Position numbers and translations under genes: made by a program. DNA of 63,854 bases, the filler included, from Octopus bimaculoides (taxonomy: Eukaryota), in the NCBI RefSeq assembly GCF_001194135.2. It is 5 parts of 5 records of this genome, joined end to end, with 100 filler letters (N's around TTAATTAATTAA, not from the genome) between each part and the next. Parts side by side here need not be neighbours in the genome. Positions count along the whole stretch, not along the records: positions 42,202 to 59,897 come from NC_068998.1; 4 more parts are not named here. One strand, written 5' to 3'. Under the pieces are notes generated by a model that was not told where the DNA came from, did no database searches, and saw only the letters and a program-made list of their open reading frames with translations. Of this stretch, positions 22,328 through 59,897 are shown piece by piece. Numbering within the stretch: position 1 is the first letter of the stretch; every line of letters begins with the position of its first letter.

Positions 22328-23225
22328 CTACCTGGCGCGTGGTACACCGTGCACCAGTTCAGACAATGTCGATTTGATGGAGAGACCGAACTAATGTGCG
22401 GCACGAACATTTGACCACTATAAAAAAGTCATTTGCNNNNNNNNNNNNNNNNNNNNNNNNNNNNNNNNNNNNNNNNNNNNNNNNNNNNNNNNNNNNNNNN
22501 NNNNNNNNNNNNNNNNNNNNNNNNNNNNNNNNNNNNNNNNNNNNNNNNNNNNNNNNNNNNNNNNNNNNNNNNNNNNNNNNNNNNNNNNNNNNNNNNNNNN
22601 NNNNNNNNNNNNNNNNNNNNNNNNNNNNNNNNNNNNNNNNNNNNNNNNNNNNNNNNNNNNNNNNNNNNNNNNNNNNNNNNNNNNNNNNNNNNNNNNNNNN
22701 NNNNNNNNNNNNNNNNNNNNNNNNNNNNNNNNNNNNNNNNNNNNNNNNNNNNNNNNNNNNNNNNNNNNNNNNNNNNNNNNNNNNNNNNNNNNNNNNNNNN
22801 NNNNNNNNNNNNNNNNNNNNNNNNNNNNNNNNNNNNNNNNNNNNNNNNNNNNNNNNNNNNNNNNNNNNNNNNNNNNNNNNNNNNNNNNNNNNNNNNNNNN
22901 NNNNNNNNNNNNNNNNNNNNNNNNNNNNNNNNNNNNNNNNNNNNNNNNNNNNNNNNNNNNNNNNNNNNNNNNNNNNNNNNNNNNNNNNNNNNNNNNNNNN
23001 NNNNNNNNNNNNNNNNNNNNNNNNNNNNNNNNNNNNNNNNNNNNNNNNNNNNNNNNNNNNNNNNNNNNNNNNNNNATATATATACGACGAGCTTCTTTCA
23101 GTTTCCATCTACCAAATCCACTCGGCCGAGGATATGATAGAAGACACTTGCTTAAAATGCTATACAATGGGACTGAACCCAGAACCACGTGGGTGGGAAG
23201 AAATCTTAACACGCAACTACGCACG
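22020..23225 (-). mobile_element. SINE family A fragments on both sides of a gap
   Basis: Tail at 22020-22250; head tacgacgagcttctttcagtttccatctaccaaatccactc...gggactgaacccagaacc at 23080-23225. Confidence 0.7.
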
Positions 23226-24932
23226 CACCTTGAAAATAATATATGGAAGGCAATGTATATCGATCCAAGAAGCTGGCTGTGCATCTGCATAATTAAGTGT
23301 AGGATTGGGTACGGTTTGTTAAGGAAGATTCGCTTTTGCATTTGCTTGCAAATCTCCTTTCTCCATGACAACGATTTTTATTGAAGAGAAAGGCTACCGA
23401 TTTGAACCAAAACAGCTTGGCACCAGTGTTACCGCATACATTCTTCAGAACACAAAAAGCCGAATTAGACACCATAAGGTATTTAGGCCTACCCTCTACC
23501 AATTTCATTAATCTACATCCCGGATTGGTACAATTTTATCGATTCCCCAAGGAGATGAAATGCAAAGCTAACTTCGGTGAGGTACGAACTCAGAACTCAA
23601 AGAGTCTGAGTTCACAAAGAATTCTGTTCACCGTTCTAATGATTCTGTCAGTTTGCCATTTAAAAGATCGATTATGGTGAACGATTTCAACCCAGAGTGA
23701 TTATAGATGTTATTTGCTCCATATGAAAACAGTTAACTTTCAATATATCTTCACTGAGTTACATCATACAGTTGATGTCCTTTGTGCTTTGTTTTGTTGT
23801 GTGCGGAGTGGATGGGGGGGGGATTGCTTTGTGTTTGCTTCTTTTGTTTGTTTATTTAAACAGTGTTTAACAGATAACTTCTAGTTTCAATGCATATTGA
23901 AATAATAATACTCAACGATTCAATACTGGAAAACAACAACGACGAAGATGACGGCGATGACGACGACGACGACGATGACGACAACGATGATAACGTCGAC
24001 GACCATGGTGATGACGATGATGATGGTGGTGGTGNNNNNNNNNNNNNNNNNNNNNNNNNNNNNNNNNNNNNNNNNNNNNNNNNNNNNNNNNNNNNNNNNN
24101 NNNNNNNNNNNNNNNNNNNNNNNNNNNNNNNNNNNNNNNNNNNNNNNNNNNNNNNNNNNNNNNNNNNNNNNNNNNNNNNNNNNNNNNNNNNNNNNNNNNN
24201 NNNNNNNNNNNNNNNNNNNNNNNNNNNNNNNNNNNNNNNNNNNNNNNNNNNNNNNNNNNNNNNNNNNNNNNNNNNNNNNNNNNNNNNNNNNNNNNNNNNN
24301 NNNNNNNNNNNNNNNNNNNNNNNNNNNNNNNNNNNNNNNNNNNNNNNNNNNNNNNNNNNNNNNNNNNNNNNNNNNNNNNNNNNNNNNNNNNNNNNNNNNN
24401 NNNNNNNNNNNNNNNNNNNNNNNNNNNNNNNNNNNNNNNNNNNNNNNNNNNNNNNNNNNNNNNNNNNNNNNNNNNNNNNNNNNNNNNNNNNNNNNNNNNN
24501 NNNNNNNNNNNNNNNNNNNNNNNNNNNNNNNNNNNNNNNNNNNNNNNNNNNNNNNNNNNNNNNNNNNNNNNNNNNNNNNNNNNNNNNNNNNNNNNNNNNN
24601 NNNNNNNNNNNNNNNNNNNNNNNNNNNNNNNNNNNNNNNNNNNNNNNNNNNNNNNNNNNNNNNNNNNNNNNNNNNNNNNNNNNNNNNNNNNNNNNNNNNN
24701 NNNNNNNNNNNNNNNNNNNNNNNNNNNNNNNNNNNNNNNNNNNNNNNNNNNNNNNNNNNNNNNNNNNNNNNNNNNNNNNNNNNNNNNNNNNNNNNNNNNN
24801 NNNNNNNNNNNNNNNNNNNNNNNNNNNNNNNNNNNNNNNNNNNNNNNNNNNNNNNNNNNNNNNNNNNNNNNNNNNNNNNNNNNNNNNNNNNNNNNNNNNN
24901 NNNNNNNNNNNNNNNNNNNNNNNNNNNNNNNG

Positions 24933-42353: not shown

Positions 42354-42420
<67 letters not shown>

Positions 42421-42452
42421 ATTTTCTTTATATATCTATCTATCTATTTCAG

Positions 42453-42583
42453 GGGCTTGCAACCAGCTGATATTATTAATAATGTCGAAGAACTCTTGCA
42501 GAAATATTTACAAGTACCGAAGAAATCTCCAGTCAGAACTAACAACTTAAAGGAAGATTTTGAACCTGCTGGTAGTGGTCTTC
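42453..42583 (+). CDS. BCL-2-family gene, coding exon A (helix 1/BH4-like segment plus loop)
   Basis: Acceptor tatctatttcAG (42451-52) and donor cttc|GTAAGT (42584). Reads (x)GLQPADIINNVEELLQKYLQVPKKSPVRTNNLKEDFEPAGSGL, phase 2 in, phase 1 out. NVEELLQKYL resembles Bak helix 1 (DTEEVFRSYV). An alternative phase-1 donor exists at 42572. Confidence 0.75.
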
Positions 42584-43099
42584 GTAAGTGGCGTTTAGTT
42601 ACCTTTAATGTTGGTTTCCTTTGTTTGTTATCTTTAATGTTAGTTACGTTTAATGTAGGTACAACTGAAATTCTTCTAGAGGCTATAAAATATATATTTT
42701 CTAATGTAGGCACAGTTGTTTTGGGGAGGGGTCATAGTCGATACCATTCACCATGATAGTTGACCGGTTCTTAATGTTATCGATGCTAGAGGGATGAAAG
42801 GCAAAGTTAATATAATCGACACTTGAACTCTGAACATGTACGCATGCGCAATATATTAAGTAACAATTATTTTATTTATTGTTTCTATGTATTTCTGTGT
42901 CACCCAAAATTCTACTTCAGCTTTAATCAAACTCATAATTTCAGGGACGATAATTAAAACTGCAAATCGTTTATTCAATCAGTATACATTGATTAAGATA
43001 TTACCCCATCCATGTGTCTCCCCAGCCTACACATTCCACACCCATCAATCCTACCAAAAATAGACCGAACATGGGCCAAACCAAGATAATAATAATAAT

Positions 43100-44608
43100 C
43101 TAGATAGGATACAACATACACAAATGAAAGAAAAAATAAAGAAAGAGTACTATAGACGAGTTAGATCAATACTAAAAACAGAGCTCAATGCTAAAAACAA
43201 GATAATGGGTATCAACACTTTAGCTGTCCCAGTTATAAGCTACAGCTACAACATCCTTAACTGGACACTAAACGAACTATCTAAAATAGACAGGAAAACA
43301 AGAAAAATAATGACAGGATATAGGATGCACCACCCAAAATCTGACATAGAAAGACTATATATACAACGCACAGAAGGTGGCAGGGGTCTTATACAGCTAG
43401 AAAACTATTATAAAATNNNNNNNNNNNNNNNNNNNNNNNNNNNNNNNNNNNNNNNNNNNNNNNNNNNNNNNNNNNNNNNNNNNNNNNNNNNNNNNNNNNN
43501 NNNNNNNNNNNNNNNNNNNNNNNNNNNNNNNNNNNNNNNNNNNNNNNNNNNNNNNNNNNNNNNNNNNNNNNNNNNNNNNNNNNNNNNNNNNNNNNNNNNN
43601 NNNNNNNNNNNNNNNNNNNNNNNNNNNNNNNNNNNNNNNNNNNNNNNNNNNNNNNNNNNNNNNNNNNNNNNNNNNNNNNNNNNNNNNNNNNNNNNNNNNN
43701 NNNNNNNNNNNNNNNNNNNNNNNNNNNNNNNNNNNNNNNNNNNNNNNNNNNNNNNNNNNNNNNNNNNNNNNNNNNNNNNNNNNNNNNNNNNNNNNNNNNN
43801 NNNNNNNNNNNNNNNNNNNNNNNNNNNNNNNNNNNNNNNNNNNNNNNNNNNNNNNNNNNNNNNNNNNNNNNNNNNNNNNNNNNNNNNNNNNNNNNNNNNN
43901 NNNNNNNNNNNNNNNNNNNNNNNNNNNNNNNNNNNNNNNNNNNNNNNNNNNNNNNNNNNNNNNNNNNNNNNNNNNNNNNNNNNNNNNNNNNNNNNNNNNN
44001 NNNNNNNNNNNNNNNNNNNNNNNNNNNNNNNNNNNNNNNNNNNNNNNNNNNNNNNNNNNNNNNNNNNNNNNNNNNNNNNNNNNNNNNNNNNNNNNNNNNN
44101 NNNNNNNNNNNNNNNNNNNNNNNNNNNNNNNNNNNNNNNNNNNNNNNNNNNNNNNNNNNNNNNNNNNNNNNNNNNNNNNNNNNNNNNNNNNNNNNNNNNN
44201 NNNNNNNNNNNNNNNNNNNNNNNNNNNNNNNNNNNNNNNNNNNNNNNNNNNNNNNNNNNNNNCAATACCAGCAGATGACAACGTTTCTTTAAACGAAATG
44301 GAAAAACTTTCAAAATACAAAGACCTGGAAATAGAGGTAACTCGAATGTGGAATCTAAAAACAGAAACAATTCCTATCATAGTAGGTGCCTTAGGTATAA
44401 TAAAAAAATATTCAGACAAATACATAACAAAAACACCAGGACTTACAAATATATATAACATACAGAAAATTGCACTACTGGGTACTGCACACATTCTACG
44501 CAAAACACTTTCAATACAGTAACCATAAGAACACCACAGCAAACCACAGCACATACCGAAGGCGCACAGAGCTGCGCTCGGTAGTGAAGTGAAAGCACGT
44601 TATAAAAA
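43100..44608 (+). mobile_element. R4/Dong-clade RLE LINE, 5'-truncated, inside intron A-B of the BCL-2-family gene
   Basis: MKEKIKKEYYRRVRSILKTELN...RLYIQRTEGGRGL and RLE end EKLSKYKDLEIEVTRMW...PIIVGALG...IALLGTAHILRK-stop, then a short 3' UTR. The 5' junction sits in (TAA)4. Confidence 0.9.
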
Positions 44609-44757
44609 CCAGAAGGAGTCACCGAGAACAAGGAACATAAGATACTGTGAGACTTTATACACTATTACCAATGTACACTATTATCAGTTTCAATTCTCAC
44701 GAAAGTTAGTCAATATCATGTACAAGTGTAATGTTTAGCTGTTAGCCTTCAGTTACT

Positions 44758-45113
44758 GTGGAGGTGCAATGGCCCAGTGGTTAGGGTAGCGGACTCACAG
44801 TCTTAGGGTCGCGGTTTTGATTCCCAGTGTGTTTATTGAGCGAAAATACCTAAAACTCCACGAGGCTCCGGCAGAGGGCGGTGGCGAACCCTGCTGTACT
44901 CTTTCACCACAACTTTCTCTCACTCTTTCTTCTTGTTTCTGTTGTACCTGTGTTTCAAAGGGTCAGCCTTGTCACACTCTGTGTCATGCTGAATCTCTCC
45001 GAGAACTACGTTAAGGGAACACTAAGGGCCACTTACACGTTAATTTTCACGAGCAGGCTGTTCCGTTGATCAGATCAACTGGAACCCTCGTTTTCGTGAC
45101 CCACCGTGTGCCA
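44758..45113 (+). mobile_element. SINE family C (intronic)
   Basis: gtggaggtgcaatggcccagtggttagggtagcggactc head and the full tail to gtgcca. Confidence 0.92.
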
Positions 45114-45263
45114 TGAGTATGTTGACTTATAGCAGATTCAGCATGAAGTTAATATAAAAGCTAAGTTGATTGCAATATGTTTAGGAATAATTTAATAAAT
45201 TGCAACACTGAAAATTGTGCATTTTCTTTTCTCTTTACAAAACACTTTCTTTTGACTTATTAG

Positions 45264-45490
45264 CTATTTGCTTTTTGGGAGCACAGGCATTTAGCAGTAA
45301 CAGGTATACTAGAGAAGTAACAGATACCGTCGCAGAAAATTTAAGGAGAATATCAGATGATTTAGAAAGAAATCATAGTTCGGAGATCAACAATGTTTTT
45401 CATCAACACAATTATAATTTGAATCAATATGGCACCTTCCGTTTAGCAGCTGAGAATTTGTTATCAAACATTCAAAGACCAATTCTACAG
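45264..45490 (+). CDS. BCL-2-family gene, coding exon B (BH3 helix 2, helices 3-4)
   Basis: Long pyrimidine tract ending ttattAG (45262-63) and donor CAG|GTAAAA (45491). Phase 1 in matches exon A; phase 0 out. Reads PICFLGAQAFSSNRYTREVTDTVAENLRRISDDLERNHSSEINNVFHQHNYNLNQYGTFRLAAENLLSNIQRPILQ. ISDDLERNHSSE aligns with Bak IGDDINRRYDSE. Confidence 0.88.
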
Positions 45491-45796
45491 GTAAAAATAA
45501 TTCTTTTCTTTTTTAAATTTTTTGTCTTATAACACAAAAATATATAACATCCTCATTTATGTTCTGTTTTATATTAATCTCTTTTTATTTAAGTTTTGTA
45601 TTTGTTGCTCTTTTAGGATTTTAGGATGTTTTATGGATACATTAAATGTTATATTTCAGTTACATTGTATAGGATCTTTTCTTGTCTTTTTGATTCTTAA
45701 ATTTATATACATACAATTTCAATTGATGTAATTTAAATCGAAATAACAGTTATACACACTAAATTATTCACTCGTACACAAACACACGCGCATGTA

Positions 45797-46435
<639 letters not shown>

Positions 46436-46689
46436 CCCCCTTTCTGTTATATTATTTTGCAACAGTTACATTAAGTGTGCATTCTACAGCCAAAGATGAT
46501 GAAGATTTTGGTTTCCATATTTTAGTTTGCTTTCTTTTTTTTTTTTTCTTCTCGTTCCACTTTTTGCATCAACTTACAACGAATTTTTTTCTTCTAGTTT
46601 TTTCTCATGTTTTCTCATAGACCAGCATCTTGGTTTGTAGATGCATCTGACCTTATGAAATGAATGTGAAAGATTACTTGGAGATACTC

Positions 46690-46889
46690 TCTCTTTACTC
46701 TTTACTCTTTTACTTGTTTTAGTCTTTTGACTGTGGCCATGCTGGAGCACCGCCTTTTAGTCGAGCAAATCGACCCCAGGACTTATTCTTTGGAAGCCTA
46801 GTACTTATTCTATCGGTCTCTTTTTCCGAACCGCTAAGTTACGGGGACATAAACACACCAGCATTGGTTGTCAAGCGATGTTGGGGGGA

Positions 46890-46921
<32 letters not shown>

Positions 46922-47470
46922 NNNNNNNNNNNNNNNNNNNNNNNNNNNNNNNNNNNNNNNNNNNNNNNNNNNNNNNNNNNNNNNNNNNNNNNNNNNNNNN
47001 NNNNNNNNNNNNNNNNNNNNNNNNNNNNNNNNNNNNNNNNNNNNNNNNNNNNNNNNNNNNNNNNNNNNNNNNNNNNNNNNNNNNNNCTTTCAGTTTCCGT
47101 CTACCAAATCCACTCACAAGGCTTTGGTCGGCCCGAGGCTATAGTAGAAGACACTGGCAGAGTCGGTAGCACGCCGGGCGAAATGCTTAGCGGTATTTCG
47201 CCTGCCGTTACGTTCTGTGTTCAAATTCCGCCGAGGTCGACTTTGCCTTTCATCCTTTCGGGGTTGATAAATTAAGTACCAGTTACGCACTGGGGTCGAT
47301 GTAATCGACTTAATCCCTCTGTCTGTCCTTGTTTGTCCCTTCTATGTTTAGCCCCTTGTGGGCAATAAAGAAATAAGAAGACACTTGCCCAAGGTGCGAC
47401 GCAGTGGGACTGAACCCGGAACCATGTGGTTGGTAAGCAAACTACTTACCACACAGCCACTCCTACGCCT
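46690..47470 (-). mobile_element. SINE family A, full length, interrupted by a SINE B
   Basis: Near-consensus tail (46690-46900) and head (47088-47155 plus 47376-47470). Confidence 0.92.
47156..47375 (+). mobile_element. SINE family B nested in SINE A with a 10-bp TSD
   Basis: TSD AGAAGACACT at 47146-47155 and 47376-47385. Confidence 0.93.
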
Positions 47471-47632
47471 ATGGCATATTACATGGCATATTATATAAGT
47501 CTGCCAATTTAATGTAGAAGCAGTTCTTTTGTAATTGTGTATATTAAATGATATTTATCTCTCACTAGATGGCGTACTTTTTTTGTTGATCCGCTTAGTG
47601 TAATCGTTATCTTCTTTCTTTTCTCCTTCCAG

Positions 47633-47758
47633 CTCGGTGCTGTATTTGAACTTTGTAGACGATATACATCTTCGTACCCTGCATTCAGTGGTGACGGTAT
47701 AATTGAACAGCATGCTATTAGATACATTCGTGATCATTTCACTCCAGATGGTACCTGG
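47633..47758 (+). CDS. BCL-2-family gene, coding exon C (helices 5-6 and BH2)
   Basis: Acceptor ttcttttctccttccAG (47631-32) and donor TGG|GTAGGT (47759). 42 open codons, phase 0/0: LGAVFELCRRYTSSYPAFSGDGIIEQHAIRYIRDHFTPDGTW. The intron falls right after the BH2 G-x-W, the conserved BCL-2-family position (GGW|). Confidence 0.88.
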
Positions 47759-48494
47759 GTAGGTTTTGATCCTTCTTGATATTTTTTGCTATACAATATT
47801 TTAGTAAAATTTAGATTATTTTCTAGACATCTTTGACATAATTTTGTGGACTATTTTCATTTTGTTTGAACAATCTGAGCTATTCTATTCTGTTAACTCT
47901 TCCTATTCCTATGTCCCTTTTTGAAGACCATTTCTTACAGATATTCCCCTGTGGATCTATTTCTGCTCTATTTCTTGACCATTCCGTAATGTTATTTTGG
48001 TCTATCTTTACCAGTTTCCCCTGCATTTTTCTAAACTATTTTTGGCCTTTTTGCTTAAACTTTTGTGGTATTGTTGTAGACTTCATAATATTTTCACTTG
48101 TAGATTATAATATGCCATTTCCTTTACATTTTTAATGTTATTATCTGATCTTTTGTGTTCCATTTATAGACTATGTAGCAGTTTCTTGTATACTCATTTG
48201 CATCATTCTTCCTTAGAATCCCTGTTGTAGTTATAGACGATTTCTGAACATTTTTGTAGACTTTTTGTATGTTATTTTCTTCTCTACATTTTTGTCTCGA
48301 GCCCCAAAACACCTGGTTATACGATTTCCATGGCGTCCAAGTGACCAATCTCACACATTTCCTCCAGAATAGGAAGCGATTCCTCCATGGGGCTATTCAT
48401 TGGCAGCTGGAGCCACGTGAAATGAATACATTGAATACACGTGAGTGAAGGGTTGTGTATAAAGTGTATTGTTGTAGTGAAGTTAAAGGAGGCG

Positions 48495-48720
48495 AGATGG
48501 CAGAATCATTAGCTTGCTGGGAAAAATGCTTAGTGGTATTTCATCTGCCATTACGTTCTAAGTTCAAACTCTGCCGAAGCCGACTTTGCCTTTTATCCTT
48601 TCGGGGTCCATAAATTAAGTACTAAGGAAACACCAGGGTCGATGTAATCGACTAGTCCCCCTCACGCTGAAATTTCAGGTCTTGAGCCTTTAGAAGAAAG
48701 GATTATTATAGCGATGTTAG
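48495..48720 (+). mobile_element. SINE family B
   Basis: ggcgagatggcagaatcattagc...acgttctaagttcaaactctgccgaagccgactttgccttttatcctttcgggg. Confidence 0.85.
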
Positions 48721-49118
48721 GAGCTAAAGAGACAGATTTGACAGAGGGTTGATGATGATGTAGTTTATGAATATAAGTGAAGGATAACTGCCTATGAGGA
48801 TTATTATTGAATACATTTGAAGTACAGTCTCGGATGTGTGACCGATACTTCTGCATAGGAATACTTCTGCATAGGAATGGGATACAAATACAACAGATAT
48901 AGGCTCTGCCTCCAGTTTGCTCTAAGTGTTTCTTTTCTCTGCAACTTTGTGGGAATACCATTGATATCATATATCTAATAACTTTACTTTTCCCTCCAAT
49001 ATATTTAGCAACCTATAATTGATATCGATATTAACATTGATCTCAAGTTTCTGGCTAACATAGCCATGCTTAATATGTAATTAACATATAAACACCACAT
49101 TTTCTTTTGTTCTTTCAG

Positions 49119-49136
49119 ACACCAGAGAGGAATTAA
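49119..49136 (+). CDS. BCL-2-family gene, probable terminal coding exon (TPERN-stop) followed by 3' UTR
   Basis: Strong acceptor cattttcttttgttctttcAG (49117-18). Phase 0 gives ACA CCA GAG AGG AAT TAA. Candidate AATAAA at 49341-49346. Confidence 0.65.
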   Translation, partial: TPERN

Positions 49137-51249: not shown

Positions 51250-51500
51250 TCTTATGTGACTAGCAACTCATGCTCTTGACAAACTTTACTGCAGATCTTA
51301 CAAATATTTTTAAGCAGATAAGTGTCTGGGATTGTAGTTAAGTCCCGTCTACGAAGTGCTCCTTTCAAGATAGATTCTTTAATTCTTCGAGCTTCAAATG
51401 CTTTACATCTATCGTAGATTATTTGTTTCCAAACCGATCGATCTTGCGTCATCTGCTCCCAGTCTTCAACTTTCACATCAAGAGCCTTAAGATTGCTTTT
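51250..51500 (-). mobile_element. RTE (BovB-like) LINE 3' end
   Basis: KSNLKALDVKVEDWEQMTQDRSVWKQIIYDRCKAFEARR...CKICSKVC. Confidence 0.8.
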
Positions 51501-51840
51501 GATGTAGTTCTCATTGCTTACACCGAGGGGGACATGCAGGCTATATTGGATCTCTTCTCTAGGACTTGTATTGCTTTTGGACTTACCATCAGTCTAAAGA
51601 AAACAAAGATCATGTCCTCTCAGCCACCAGGTCAACCTTATGTGGAACCTAACATCTTCGTCCAGGGTACAAGATCAGATGGTGGTTAACTCGTTCATAT
51701 ACCTTGGCAGCACTCTCTTTAGAGATGGATCCTTTGATTCTGAAATAAATGTGAGAATTGAAAAAAACAGCAAAGCATTTGGAAGGCTTGAAAATCGTGT
51801 GTGGTAAGATAGAGGTATCACCTTTAAAACCAAGCTGAGA
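51501..51840 (+). mobile_element. RTE LINE RT segment, inverted relative to its 3' end
   Basis: DMQAILDLFSRTCIAFGLTISLKKTKIM...AFGRLENRVW.DRGITFKTKL. Confidence 0.85.
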
Positions 51841-51857
51841 TCGTGTGCTGGAACGAA

Positions 51858-52139
51858 AACAATTGCAGCGTGGAAAGTGTTTATAAGCCATTTGAAATAA
51901 CATACAAAAACCGTTAAATTTAATTTGTCAACATATTTTCGTCACTTTGAGACCGCGACCTGTTCACTGACAAAATTCTGTGCTGAGATGCATCTCAGAA
52001 TTTTGTCAGTGAACAAGTCGCAGTCTCAAAGCGACGAAAATATTTTGAGACAAATAAAAATTTAAATGTTGAAGTGAATCTAACGGTTTTTGTATGTTAT
52101 TTCAAATGGCTTATAAACACTTTCCACTCTGCAATTGTT
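51858..52139. mobile_element. 282-bp fold-back MITE
   Basis: Outer arms of about 59 bp (aacaattgcagcgtggaaagtg... / ...cactttccactctgcaattgtt), inner arms of about 48 bp, central palindrome CTGAGATGCATCTCAG (51983-51998). Confidence 0.9.
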
Positions 52140-52845: not shown

Positions 52846-53128
52846 AAAAATGTCCTGTTGTTGATGTTGAAATTTCAACGATGGAGCTTCGGATCTAGGT
52901 TAGAAACCAGCTCTTTCTCTATTGGCAAGAAATCTTGAAATAAAACTGGAAGTGGGGGAGAGGTTGTGTGGTAAGAAACTTGTTTCCCAACCACATGGTT
53001 CCTGACTCTCAATTCATGGTGAAGAGTTAGATTTGCCAACTTTGGTATATTGCATGTCCAGGGCACTTTTAGATCTGGAGAAGTTTATCGAAGAGCTCCA
53101 GATCTGGACAGAATTAATATCGTACAAC

Positions 53129-53557
53129 GAGAGAGAGAGAGAGAGAGATAGAGAGATAGAGAGAGAGAGAGAGAAAGAAAAAAGGAGAGAAGAGAGAGAG
53201 AGACAAAAGAAGAAAGAAAAAGGAGAGTGAGAATGAGAGAAAGAGAAAAGAGAGAGAGAGAGAGAGAGAGAGACAAAAGAAGAGAGAAAAAGGAGAGAGA
53301 GTAAAGAAGAGAGAATGAGAGAAAGAAAAAAGAAGAGAGAGAGAGAGACAAAAGGAAAAAGAAAAAGGCGAGAGTAAAGAAGAGAGAGAGAGAGAGAGAG
53401 CGAAAAGATGAAAGAGAAAAGAGAGAGAGAAAAGAAGAGAGAGTAAAAAGAAGAGAGAAAAAGAAGAGAGAGAGAGAGAGAGAGACAGAGAGAGAGAGAC
53501 AGAGAGAAAAGAAGAAAGAGATAGGAGAGGGAGAGAGAAAAAGTAGAGAGACAGATA

Positions 53558-53592
<35 letters not shown>

Positions 53593-53678
53593 AGAGAGAG
53601 AGAAAAAGAAGAGAGAGAGAGAGAGAGAGAGAAAGAAGAGAGAGAGAAAAAGAAGAGAGAGAGAGAGAGAGAGAGAGG
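53129..53678. repeat. About 550-bp polypurine (GA)n/AAAAGAAG tract
   Basis: Almost all A/G with recurring gagaaaaagaagagagag modules. Confidence 0.95.
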
Positions 53679-53823
53679 ACGAGCGGAGAATAAAATAAGA
53701 CTTGTACTTTATTTATCGACATCGAAATGATGAGAGAGCTAAGGAATAGGACGGTCTGAGCATTGAGCCAGTTTAATCTGCTTCTGTAAGTTCTGCATAC
53801 GGGTAGTTGAAGCTCGTATTTAA

Positions 53824-54320: not shown

Positions 54321-54703
54321 CGTTGGCACTCCGTCGGTTACAACGACTAGAGTTCCAGTTGATCCGATCAACGGAACAGCCTGCTCTTGAAATTAACGTG
54401 CAAGTGGCTGAGCACTCCACAGACACGTGTACCCTTAACCTAGTTCTCGGGGATATTCAGCGTGACACAGTGTGACAAGGTTGGCCCTTTGAAATACAGG
54501 TACAACAGAAAGAGGAAGAAAGAATGAGAGAAAGTTGTGGTGAAAGAGTACAGCAGGGTTCGCCACCACCCCCTGCCGGAGCCTCGTGGAGCTTTAGGTG
54601 TTTTCGCTCAATAAACACTCACAACGCCCGGTCTGGGAATCGAAACCGCGATCCTACGACCACGAGTCCGCTGCTCTAACCACTGGGCCATTGCGCCTCC
54701 ACG
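54321..54703 (-). mobile_element. SINE family C, full length with 11-bp TSD
   Basis: TSD AGCAGTTCAGT at 54310-54320 and 54704-54714. Confidence 0.95.
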
Positions 54704-56155: not shown

Positions 56156-56311
56156 TTTGCTAACGATTCTTGTATAAAAATATTGAATTTGATAATATAG
56201 ACGCAAGTATAAAAAAAATTGCCTAGACGTGTTAAAAACAAATACATAATATCCGTTTCTCAACTCACTGCACATGGTGGAAAGAACAAATTTTTTCAGA
56301 CCTATTTTTGG

Positions 56312-56695
56312 CAGTTACGATGGGATTTTGCTCCACCAGGGTTTGCAAACCCTGGTGGAGCAAAATCCCATCGTAACTGTTGCGGAACTAGCAAAGAAGT
56401 TTGAATTTGGTCGTTCAACCATTCATCGACACCTTTGTGCCATCAGAAAAGCCAGAAAATTGGTTCATTGAGTTCCTCATAAACTTTCCGAGTCTAATTG
56501 CGCGCAGAGAGTGAATGTGTGCTCTTCTTTGCTGTCACATCTCACAAATGAACCTTTTTTGGACCGAATGGCGACGAGAAATGGGTTCTCTATAAAAATG
56601 TCAAGCACCGAAGACAGTGTGAAGGGAAAGGAAAAACATCGGTACCCTTAGCTAACGAAGATCTTCACCCACGTAAGGTGTTGTTGAAAGGTTTA
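56312..56695 (+). pseudogene. mariner transposase remnant
   Basis: LVEQNPIVTVAELAKKF...STIHRHL...KL.H*VPHKLS (WVPHEL motif), GDEKWVLYKN, LHPRKVLL; runs into the gap. Confidence 0.88.

Positions 56696-57849: not shown

Positions 57850-59897
<2,048 letters not shown>

What the first reader, a model, noticed from the sequence alone, without database searches (positions are those of the whole stretch)
45341..45364. BAD-type BH3 with a built-in RRxS phospho-switch in a multi-helix BCL-2 protein
Seen: the BH3 reads LRRISDDL, with Ser (codon 45353-45355) where most BH3s have Gly (LxxIGD). Established: BAD has LRRMSDEF, and PKA phosphorylation of that Ser (mouse S155, human S118) blocks binding to BCL-XL. 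Inference: RRIS is a PKA consensus in the same register, so this protein may combine a full BCL-2 fold with a kinase-gated BH3, which is unusual.
Basis: partly seen in the sequence, partly recalled or inferred. Interest (0 to 1): 0.7.

Follow-up and report, generated by a model that had tools for sequence, protein, structure and literature searches.

The report
Octopus BCL-2-like gene, unconserved RRxS
The LRRISDDL motif is real and lies in the BH3 helix of a small, very divergent, octopus-only BCL-2-like protein, but the two orthologs available read LRTIADEL, so the BAD-like RRxS "phospho-switch" is a species-specific variant rather than a conserved regulatory device.

Summary
Bases 45341-45364 (+) encode LRRISDDL, with Ser codon TCA at 45353-45355.

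The motif lies in exon 3 of a five-exon gene. Four exons are in the piece: 42453-42583, 45264-45490, 47633-47758 and 49119-49136. The product is about 170 aa, all-helical and has no membrane anchor.

The gene is collinear, introns included, with Octopus sinensis LOC115219865, annotated as "uncharacterized protein". Four searches of billions of proteins found no relative other than the O. sinensis/O. vulgaris protein.

BCL-2 homology is real but remote:
- Pfam Bcl-2 scores 15-16 bits against a cut-off of 31.4.
- hhalign against eight human family members scores 34.9; the best of 200 column shuffles scores 22.1.
- Two low-confidence AlphaFold models find BCL-2, BCL-XL, BAK and BFK chains first in the PDB, but with E of 0.45 or more.
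- An intron follows the Trp of "DGTW", the family's hallmark BH2 position.
- There is no NWGR BH1 motif and no transmembrane tail.

Both orthologs read LRTIADEL, lacking the Ser and the second Arg. The segment evolves at a near-neutral rate (dN/dS 0.81, against 0.14 for the other exons), and only the hydrophobic face and the Asp are conserved. Ser is one of the small residues (Gly, Ala, Ser) seen at this position.

Interest is modest.

The parts
42453..42583 (+). Exon 2 of the gene. It encodes GLQPADIINNVEELLQKYLQVPKK (the predicted alpha1 helix) and the start of the variable alpha1-alpha2 loop. The acceptor is tttcag|G and the donor C|GTAAGT. It ends with one base of a split codon. An in-frame alternative donor exists at 42571/42572.
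   Evidence: Sequence. The 24 residues are identical to residues 9-32 of O. sinensis XP_029646019. The split codon matches the two bases that begin exon 3. AlphaFold helix at residues 12-26 of the ortholog.
45264..45490 (+). Exon 3. It encodes the end of the loop, the BH3 helix (alpha2), alpha3 and alpha4, ending ...NQYGTFRLAAENLLSNIQRPILQ. The acceptor is ttattag|CT and the donor CAG|GTAAAA. A second in-frame acceptor at gggag|CA (exon start 45282) is the position homologous to the O. sinensis acceptor.
   Evidence: sequence and translation. (DNA alignment with O. sinensis). (Pfam Bcl-2 profile positions 1-44, 15-16 bits). (hhalign in register with BAX/BAK BH3 through alpha4).
45341..45364 (+). 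The finding itself: BH3 core LRRISDDL (h2 Leu, h3 Ile, small-residue Ser, invariant Asp, h4 Leu).
   Evidence: The orthologs read LRTIADEL.
45353..45355 (+). Ser codon TCA at the BH3 small-residue position. O. sinensis has GCA (Ala). The neighbouring AGA (Arg, 45347-45349) is ACA (Thr) in O. sinensis. Each difference is a single-base change.
   Evidence: (codon-level DNA alignment).
47633..47758 (+). Exon 4: LGAVFELCRRYTSSYPAFSGDGIIEQHAIRYIRDHFTPDGTW. It holds predicted alpha5 and alpha6 and the BH2-like DGTW. It ends exactly on the Trp codon, followed by the donor GTAGGT.
   Evidence: It is 93% identical to the O. sinensis exon. PMC8998228 describes the family's conserved exon boundary at the Trp of the BH2 GGW motif.
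49119..49136 (+). Exon 5: TPERN plus the stop codon TAA. The protein ends five residues after the BH2-position Trp, so there is no C-terminal transmembrane helix.
   Evidence: The O. sinensis counterpart is KPERN*.

Best explanation
The 24 bases encode the core of a BH3-type amphipathic helix in exon 3 of a five-exon gene. Exon 1 lies upstream of the piece. The product is about 170 aa, soluble and all-helical. It is the ortholog of Octopus sinensis LOC115219865, annotated as "uncharacterized protein".

The protein is a very divergent BCL-2 homolog:
- It keeps an alpha1 helix, a canonical BH3, the alpha3-alpha6 helices, and a reduced BH2 (DGTW) with the family's hallmark intron directly after the Trp.
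- Its BH1 has lost NWGR.
- It has no membrane anchor.

In architecture it resembles the soluble BH3-bearing members BFK (BCL2L15) and BID, rather than BCL-2 or BCL-XL.

The most likely mode of action is inferred, not shown. The BH3 helix is held in the helical bundle. When exposed, it would insert its conserved Val/Leu/Ile/Leu face and Asp into the groove of canonical octopus BCL-2-family proteins.

The Ser is one of the small residues seen at this position (Gly in most BH3s; Ala in PUMA and BMF, Ser in BAD, from my own knowledge). The RRxS of the window species is a species-specific variant, two single-base changes away from the LRTIADEL of its orthologs. It arose in a segment that evolves at about the neutral rate. 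It is therefore not a conserved part of how the protein works, although phosphorylating it would plausibly block groove binding.
For: Gene model and orthology:
- In-frame exons with canonical splice sites.
- Collinear 80-90% nucleotide identity across introns and flanks with the O. sinensis locus L001.
- Exon-by-exon protein matches.

BCL-2 homology:
- Pfam Bcl-2 profile positions 1-44 match at 15-16 bits.
- A local HMM built from eight human members hits only this exon among 731 six-frame fragments (E 0.0014).
- hhalign gives P 1.4e-4 over 89 columns, in register from BH3 to alpha6.
- The local rerun scores 34.9, against a maximum of 22.1 in 200 column shuffles and 13.4 for the reversed alignment.
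- Two AlphaFold models predict six helices. Their top Foldseek PDB hits are almost all BCL-2, BCL-XL, BAK, BFK, BOK or MCL-1 chains, with TM 0.42-0.50.
- Exon 4 ends on the Trp codon, as described for the family in PMC8998228.

The gene is functional: dN/dS is 0.14 for exons 2, 4 and 5.

RRxS is not conserved:
- O. sinensis and O. vulgaris read LRTIADEL.
- The first 37 aligned codons of exon 3 have dN 0.22 and dS 0.27 (ratio 0.81). Their nucleotide identity is 80%, against 87.6% in non-coding DNA.
- V, L, I, D and L of the BH3 are invariant.

Physical plausibility of a block by negative charge: PMC9171138 reports that a Gly-to-Asp change at this position in the BECN1 BH3 strongly lowers BCL-XL affinity. 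PKA preferentially phosphorylates BAD Ser155 (PMC1368972).
Against: - No single BCL-2 test is strong. Pfam is below its cut-off, PDB sequence searches found no BCL-2 chain, the AlphaFold models have pLDDT 46-50, and no Foldseek hit has E below 0.45.
- The NWGR motif is absent, and the Arg that hhalign places on its Arg is Thr in O. sinensis.
- Only two closely related orthologs exist, so the ancestral state (RRIS or RTIA) is unknown. A lineage-specific gain of regulation cannot be excluded.
- The BH3-donor mechanism is inference by analogy. No binding partner, expression data or phosphorylation data were available.
Confidence: 0.65

Rival explanations
1. One reading: the window species has gained a working PKA-type (basophilic kinase) phospho-switch inside the BH3. 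Phosphorylating the Ser would gate groove binding, as at BAD Ser155.
For: - RRIS matches R-R-x-S in the same register as BAD's RRMS, with the same acidic P+1 residue. PKA prefers BAD Ser155 (PMC1368972).
- A negative charge at this position is known to damage groove binding (PMC9171138).
- Non-synonymous differences in this segment (17 at 89 sites) slightly exceed the non-coding difference rate of 0.124 (binomial P 0.045). That would be compatible with adaptive change.
Against: - Both orthologs lack the Ser and the P-2 Arg.
- The motif has low information content, and a second RRx[ST] (RRYT) sits in a predicted core helix of the same protein.
- The Ser lies in a predicted long helix of a folded bundle, which is a poor kinase substrate unless unfolded. 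BAD is disordered, and access to Ser155 depends on prior Ser136 phosphorylation. I saw no counterpart of BAD's 14-3-3 sites when reading the sequence.
- The selection signal is marginal (Fisher P 0.07).
Confidence: 0.12
2. The gene is not a BCL-2 homolog. It is an orphan octopod helical protein that carries a chance BH3-like short linear motif.
For: - Pfam is below its cut-off and covers only 44 of 100 profile positions.
- No BCL-2 chain appears in PDB sequence searches.
- There is no NWGR and no GGW.
- The similarity is concentrated on the BH3-alpha4 stretch.
- The AlphaFold models are low-confidence and all Foldseek E-values exceed 0.4.
- No relatives outside Octopus were found in four large searches.
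Against: - The hhalign score is far above 200 shuffles and the reversed control. The alignment runs in register for 86-89 columns, beyond the BH3.
- Two independent models both retrieve BCL-2-family chains first out of 350,542 chains.
- The exon boundary falls directly after the Trp at the BH2 position.
- An alpha1 helix and a variable alpha1-alpha2 loop lie where the family has them.
Confidence: 0.15
3. Exon 3 belongs to a decaying gene, and the variation at the BH3 is simply loss of constraint before pseudogenisation.
For: - dN/dS is 0.81 in the BH3 segment.
- The 5' 38 bases of exon 3 are only 42% identical between species, with indels and a shifted acceptor.
Against: - The reading frames and all splice sites are intact in the window and in O. 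sinensis, and the O. vulgaris protein is complete.
- Exons 2, 4 and 5 are under purifying selection (dN/dS 0.14).
- Within the BH3, every hydrophobic position and the Asp are conserved while the intervening positions vary.
Confidence: 0.05

Closest known systems
BAD BH3 (LRRMSDEF; mouse Ser155 / human Ser118)
   Same: - An Arg-Arg-x-Ser-Asp-acidic-hydrophobic core in the same BH3 register.
- Ser at the small-residue position.
- The R-R-x-S basophilic-kinase consensus.
   Different: - BAD is an intrinsically disordered BH3-only protein. It has additional 14-3-3 sites (Ser112, Ser136) that control access to Ser155 (PMC1368972).
- The octopus protein is a predicted six-helix bundle.
- Its RRxS is absent from both orthologs.
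- There is no sequence similarity outside the motif.
BAX / BAK / BOK (multi-motif effectors)
   Same: - This is the best profile similarity: hhalign scores 27.6 against the effector subset and 19.1 against the pro-survival subset.
- The BH3-alpha3-alpha4 stretch aligns in register.
- The multi-exon gene has the BH3 on its own exon and an exon boundary after the BH2 Trp.
   Different: - No NWGR BH1.
- BH2 is reduced to DGTW.
- alpha5 to alpha8 are compressed: 46 residues from the BH1 position to the BH2-position Trp, against 53 in BAX.
- No C-terminal transmembrane helix.
- Ser or Ala instead of Gly in the BH3.
BFK (BCL2L15, PDB 7ccl)
   Same: - About 165 aa and soluble, with BH3 and BH2 but no recognisable BH1.
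- The protein ends five residues after the BH2 Trp (GGWENLES against DGTWTPERN).
- BFK chains appear among the Foldseek hits.
   Different: - No detectable sequence relationship: hhalign P is 0.32 with the wrong register.
- The Foldseek TM-score to BFK (0.29-0.36) is lower than to BCL-2 or BCL-XL.
- BFK has Gly in its BH3 (LRMLGDQF).
BID
   Same: A soluble helical-bundle protein with an internal BH3 and no BH1, BH2 or transmembrane signature. Its BH3 is latent and is exposed after activation.
   Different: - hhalign is not significant (P 0.11).
- BID lacks the BH2 Trp and its intron.
- No cleavage-activation evidence exists for the octopus protein.

Membership tests
BCL-2 family (multi-motif, Pfam PF00452) | BH3 motif: h1-small-x-x-h2(Leu)-x-x-h3-small-Asp-acidic-h4 | tested here: met
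   VAENLRRISDDLE at 45329-45367. Val, Leu, Ile, Asp and Leu are conserved in all three species.
BCL-2 family (multi-motif, Pfam PF00452) | Pfam Bcl-2 domain at or above the gathering score | tested here: not met
   The window protein scores 15-16.4 bits against a cut-off of 31.4, covering profile positions 1-44 of 100 only. O. sinensis has no Bcl-2 hit and O. vulgaris scores 13.3 bits.
BCL-2 family (multi-motif, Pfam PF00452) | BH1 with the NWGR signature | tested here: not met
   No NWG[RK] or W[GA][RK] occurs in any frame of the piece. The aligned position reads IQRPILQLGAVFEL, and the Arg is Thr in O. sinensis.
BCL-2 family (multi-motif, Pfam PF00452) | BH2 (W..GGW) with the conserved exon boundary at the GGW Trp | tested here: inconclusive
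   The motif is reduced to DGTW. The exon ends exactly on TGG followed by GTAGGT, in the window and in O. sinensis. The boundary rule comes from PMC8998228. The hhalign alignment stops six residues before the Trp.
BCL-2 family (multi-motif, Pfam PF00452) | Profile-profile similarity beyond the BH3 | tested here: met
   hhalign gives P 1.4e-4 to 5.4e-5 over 86-89 columns. The score is 34.9, against a maximum of 22.1 in 200 shuffles and 13.4 for the reversed alignment.
BCL-2 family (multi-motif, Pfam PF00452) | BCL-2 fold (helical bundle around a central hairpin) | tested here: inconclusive
   The AlphaFold models have pLDDT 46 and 50 and pTM 0.40 and 0.44, with six helices. The Foldseek top hits are BCL-2-family chains, but with E 0.45-3 and TM 0.4-0.5.
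BCL-2 family (multi-motif, Pfam PF00452) | C-terminal transmembrane anchor (present in most members, not all) | tested here: not met
   The protein ends TPERN* or KPERN*, five residues after the Trp.
BAD-type phospho-regulated BH3 | Ser at the BH3 small-residue position within R-R-x-S | tested here: met
   LRRISDDL in the window.
BAD-type phospho-regulated BH3 | Conservation of the phospho-acceptor and the basic residues in orthologs | tested here: not met
   O. sinensis and O. vulgaris read LRTIADEL.
BAD-type phospho-regulated BH3 | Disordered BH3-only architecture with companion 14-3-3 sites | tested here: not met
   Six helices are predicted. Reading the sequence by eye, I saw no RSxSxP-type site that is conserved: RRYTSSYP is KRYTSAYP in O. 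sinensis.
BAD-type phospho-regulated BH3 | Actual phosphorylation that blocks groove binding | not testable with these tools
   This needs kinase assays, phosphoproteomics and binding measurements.
BFK / BCL2L15 | Sequence homology to BFK | tested here: not met
   hhalign P is 0.32 over 14 columns in the wrong register. The BFK sequence I used was checked against PDB 7ccl.

The most novel reading that the evidence does not exclude
An octopod-restricted, soluble BCL-2-fold protein whose loop and BH3 surface are under diversifying selection has, in this species, acquired a BAD-like R-R-x-S phospho-acceptor at the groove-contacting small-residue position. That would be an independent, convergent origin of kinase gating of a BH3, inside a folded family member.
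Probability: 0.1. Interest if true: 0.55.

Novelty: new member of a known kind. Interest (0 to 1): 0.3.

Why it matters
The practical gain is an annotation. A gene listed only as "uncharacterized protein" in O. sinensis and O. vulgaris, with no Pfam domain on record, is most likely a very divergent, soluble, BH3-bearing BCL-2 relative. It appears to be confined to octopods among the sequences searched.

This adds a lineage-specific member to the mollusc apoptosis repertoire. [quoted passage not shown]

The fast evolution of its loop and the non-hydrophobic positions of its BH3 is a small but testable lead. The headline claim of a built-in kinase switch in a BCL-2-fold protein would matter if true, but it is undercut by the lack of conservation.

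Tried and rejected
- **Word-indexed protein search with the exon alone** found nothing. With the spliced protein and with the three-species profile it found only the O. sinensis/O. vulgaris cluster. The full HMMER scan of 1.84 billion representatives gave that cluster plus three repeat-protein false positives.
- **PDB sequence searches** with the exon and with the profile returned no BCL-2 chain.
- **Search for BH1/BH2 exons.** tblastn with eight human family members found only the BH3 exon. The later exons were found only through the ortholog, because BH1 and BH2 are degenerate.
I replaced it with a local HMM search of 731 fragments.
I modelled the O. sinensis ortholog instead, once with the window exons as alignment rows and once alone.
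- **A specific BFK or BID relationship** was rejected by hhalign.
- **Literature.** No paper contains LRRISDDL or LOC115219865. The supplement held for PMC8998228, whose Figure 5 lists an O. bimaculoides BH3-only candidate, contains none of this gene's peptides.
- **tRNA-derived origin of the repeat upstream of exon 3.** ARAGORN found no tRNA genes in the piece.

Full report
**1. Observation**

The piece is AT-rich, repeat-laden animal DNA with assembly gaps. On the + strand, 45341-45364 reads TTA AGG AGA ATA TCA GAT GAT TTA, which is LRRISDDL. Ser is TCA at 45353-45355. With its flanks (VAENLRRISDDLE) it fits the full BH3 signature.

The relaxed pattern L..[IVLM][GAS]D[DE] occurs once in all six frames of the 17.7-kb piece. 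By my own estimate from residue frequencies, about one such hit is expected by chance. The motif alone therefore proves nothing; the context decides.

**2. Gene model**

The motif lies in an open stretch bounded by a good acceptor (ttattag|CT, exon start 45264) and donor (CAG|GTAAAA, exon end 45490).

A full HMMER scan of 1.84 billion representative proteins with this exon's peptide found one true relative, P0001, at E 8e-21 and 71% identity. P0001 is XP_029646019, "uncharacterized protein LOC115219865" of Octopus sinensis, 165 aa. Its cluster also holds an O. vulgaris "hypothetical predicted protein".

The P0001 sequence revealed the other exons in the window:
- Exon 2, 42453-42583: GLQPADIINNVEELLQKYLQVPKK, identical to P0001 over these 24 residues.
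- Exon 4, 47633-47758: LGAVFELCRRY...HFTPDGTW, 93% identical.
- Exon 5, 49119-49136: TPERN and the stop codon.

The splice phases fit. Exon 2 ends with one base of a codon and exon 3 begins with two. Exons 3/4 and 4/5 join at codon boundaries.

Exon 1 encodes MSSAMVNQ in O. sinensis and lies 8.4 kb upstream of exon 2 there. It falls outside the piece.

The O. sinensis locus (L001) is collinear with the window through introns and flanks at 80-90% nucleotide identity. These genes are therefore orthologs, not paralogs. The window species is an Octopus about 0.17 synonymous substitutions per site from O. sinensis. I could not name the species.

**3. What the protein is**

Sequence evidence for BCL-2 homology is weak when each test is taken alone, but the tests agree.

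- *Pfam.* The Bcl-2 model matches profile positions 1-44 of 100 at 15-16 bits, against a cut-off of 31.4.
- *tblastn.* All eight human family members place their BH3 on this exon and nowhere else.
- *Local HMM.* A profile of those eight sequences hits only this exon among 731 six-frame fragments (E 0.0014).
- *hhalign.* The three-octopus alignment against the eight-member alignment gives P 1.4e-4 over 89 columns, in register from BH3 through alpha6.
- *hhalign controls.* My local rerun scored 34.9. The maximum over 200 column-shuffled controls was 22.1, and the reversed alignment scored 13.4.
- *Subfamily.* Similarity is highest to the BAX/BAK/BOK subset (27.6) and lower to the pro-survival subset (19.1). 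There is none to BFK or BID alone.
- *Structure.* Two AlphaFold runs on the ortholog were low-confidence (pLDDT 46 and 50). Both gave six helices: 12-26, 35-53 (35-39 in one model), 58-92, 98-110, 115-132 and 141-153.
- *Fold search.* In both Foldseek searches of 350,542 PDB chains, the top hits were almost entirely BCL-2, BCL-XL, BAK, BFK, BOK and MCL-1. TM-scores were 0.4-0.5, but E was 0.45 or more. This is suggestive, not significant.
- *Exon boundary.* Exon 4 ends exactly on the Trp codon of DGTW. PMC8998228 states that the family's conserved exon boundary falls at the Trp of the BH2 GGW motif.

Evidence against full membership:
- There is no NWGR. The aligned stretch is IQRPILQLGAV, and its Arg is Thr in O. 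sinensis.
- The BH2 is reduced.
- There is no transmembrane tail, because the protein ends five residues after the Trp.
- PDB sequence searches find no BCL-2 chain.

I conclude, at roughly 80%, that this is a very divergent, soluble, BH3-bearing BCL-2 homolog. In architecture it is closest to BFK or BID. In residual sequence it is closest to BAX and BAK. It is not a "full" canonical BCL-2 protein.

None of the four large protein searches found any relative outside O. sinensis and O. vulgaris.

**4. The RRxS**

Both orthologs read LRTIADEL (O. sinensis VAENLRTIADELERGY; O. vulgaris VTENLRTIADELERDY). At the DNA level, AGA(R)/ACA(T), TCA(S)/GCA(A) and GAT(D)/GAA(E) are single-base differences.

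Gly occupies this position in most BH3s (PMC9171138). From my own knowledge, PUMA and BMF have Ala there and BAD has Ser. S/A exchange is thus conservative for BH3 function.

The motif lies in the fastest-evolving part of the gene, measured against O. sinensis:

| Region | Measure |
|---|---|
| Exons 2, 4 and 5 | dN/dS 0.14 |
| First 37 aligned codons of exon 3 (end of loop, BH3, alpha3) | dN 0.22, dS 0.27, dN/dS 0.81 |
| Last 26 codons of exon 3 | 96% nucleotide identity |
| 5' 38 bases of exon 3 | 42% identity, with a 9-base indel and a shifted acceptor |
| Collinear non-coding DNA | 87.6% identity on average |

The non-synonymous excess over the non-coding rate is marginal (binomial P 0.045; Fisher P 0.07). 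I read it as relaxed or mildly diversifying evolution of the non-contact positions. Within the BH3, Val, Leu, Ile, Asp and Leu are invariant, as are the flanking AEN and ER. This is the pattern expected of a working amphipathic BH3 whose other positions are free to vary.

RRx[ST] is also a low-information motif. A second one (RRYT) occurs in the predicted core helix encoded by exon 4.

**5. Mechanism**

*Shown:* the gene structure, the orthology, purifying selection on most of the gene, a conserved BH3 hydrophobic face, and remote BCL-2 similarity.

*Inferred by analogy with BFK, BID, BAX and BAK:* the BH3 helix is packed in the bundle and acts as a ligand for the grooves of canonical family members once exposed.

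A phosphate on the Ser would probably block such binding. A Gly-to-Asp change at this position in BECN1 strongly reduces BCL-XL binding (PMC9171138), and PKA preferentially phosphorylates BAD Ser155 (PMC1368972).

However, BAD is disordered, and access to Ser155 depends on prior Ser136 phosphorylation. Here the Ser sits in a predicted long helix of a folded protein. I saw no companion 14-3-3 sites when reading the sequence. The site is also absent from the sister species. I put a functional switch in this species at about 10-12%.

**6. Novelty and verdict**

The useful result is the recognition of an unannotated, apparently octopod-restricted, divergent BCL-2-family member with a fast-evolving loop and BH3 surface. 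That makes it a new member of a known kind.

The "built-in phospho-switch" is most likely an incidental species-specific variant.

Interest is 0.3.

Noticed in passing
window 42453-49136 (whole gene); L001 10001-30502: The gene is annotated only as "uncharacterized protein" (O. sinensis) or "hypothetical predicted protein" (O. vulgaris), with no Pfam domain on record. Four searches of up to 5.8 billion proteins found no relative outside these two species. It looks like an octopod-restricted, unrecognised BCL-2-family member.
   Followed up: yes
window 45264-45412 against L001 about 23217-23360: The loop end and the BH3/alpha3 part of exon 3 are less conserved between species than the surrounding introns. 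The first 38 bases are 42% identical and the next 111 bases 80%, against 87.6% for non-coding DNA. dN/dS is 0.81. The rest of the gene has dN/dS 0.14. This could be diversifying selection or local relaxation; the statistics are marginal.
   Followed up: partly
window 45262-45283; L001 about 23205-23217: The exon-3 acceptor appears to have shifted by 18 bases between species. O. sinensis uses ctctag|TA. The homologous window position is a weak gggag|CA. A stronger ttattag|CT lies 18 bases upstream in the window and has no AG counterpart in O. sinensis. Both window acceptors are in frame, and the products differ by the hydrophobic ICFLGA. RNA data are needed.
   Followed up: partly
window 45320-45331 (EVTD|T); O. 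sinensis residues 57-64 (DTGDIID|G): An Asp two residues before the first BH3 hydrophobic position is invariant in all three species. In O. sinensis and O. vulgaris it closes DxxD motifs (DTGD, DIID followed by Gly) that resemble caspase sites. Cleavage there would free the BH3, as in BID. This is speculation from reading the sequence.
   Followed up: no
window 43124-44522 (intron 2), interrupted by the N gap 43417-44262: Open frames MKEKIKKEYYRRVRSILK...GGRGLIQLENYYK and MEKLSKYKDLEIEVTRMWNLK...LRKTLSIQ look to me like the C-terminal part of a non-LTR retrotransposon ORF2 (from memory of such elements). Pfam gave no hit.
   Followed up: partly
window about 44780-45130 (+) and 54333-54702 (-); L001 22662-23020: An interspersed repeat, present as an inverted pair in the window, ends about 130 bases upstream of the exon-3 acceptor. 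Its counterpart is at the same place in O. sinensis, at 82% identity. Its frames translate to ...EAPAEGGGEPCCTLSPQLSL.... ARAGORN found no tRNA genes in the piece, so it is not obviously a tRNA-derived SINE.
   Followed up: partly
window 42355-42450; 45790-45905; 53090-53720; 57900-58300; 59200-59897: There are several simple repeats. (CTAT)n runs up to the polypyrimidine tract of the exon-2 acceptor. (ACGC)n/(AC)n lies 300 bases into intron 3. A 630-base purine-rich GA block and long CA-rich tracts lie near the piece end. O. sinensis also has about 3.2 kb more sequence than the window just upstream of exon 2 (window 42212-42450 matches L001 15044-15291).
   Followed up: no
window 51342-51686 (+) and 51255-51941 (-); 56250-56648 (+): There are degenerate mobile-element remnants downstream of the gene. 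One is a reverse-transcriptase tail (Pfam RVT_1, 18 bits, below cut-off). The other is a helix-turn-helix fragment followed by VPHKLSESNCAQRV..., which resembles the N-terminus of a mariner-type transposase (HTH_11, 22 bits, below cut-off).
   Followed up: partly
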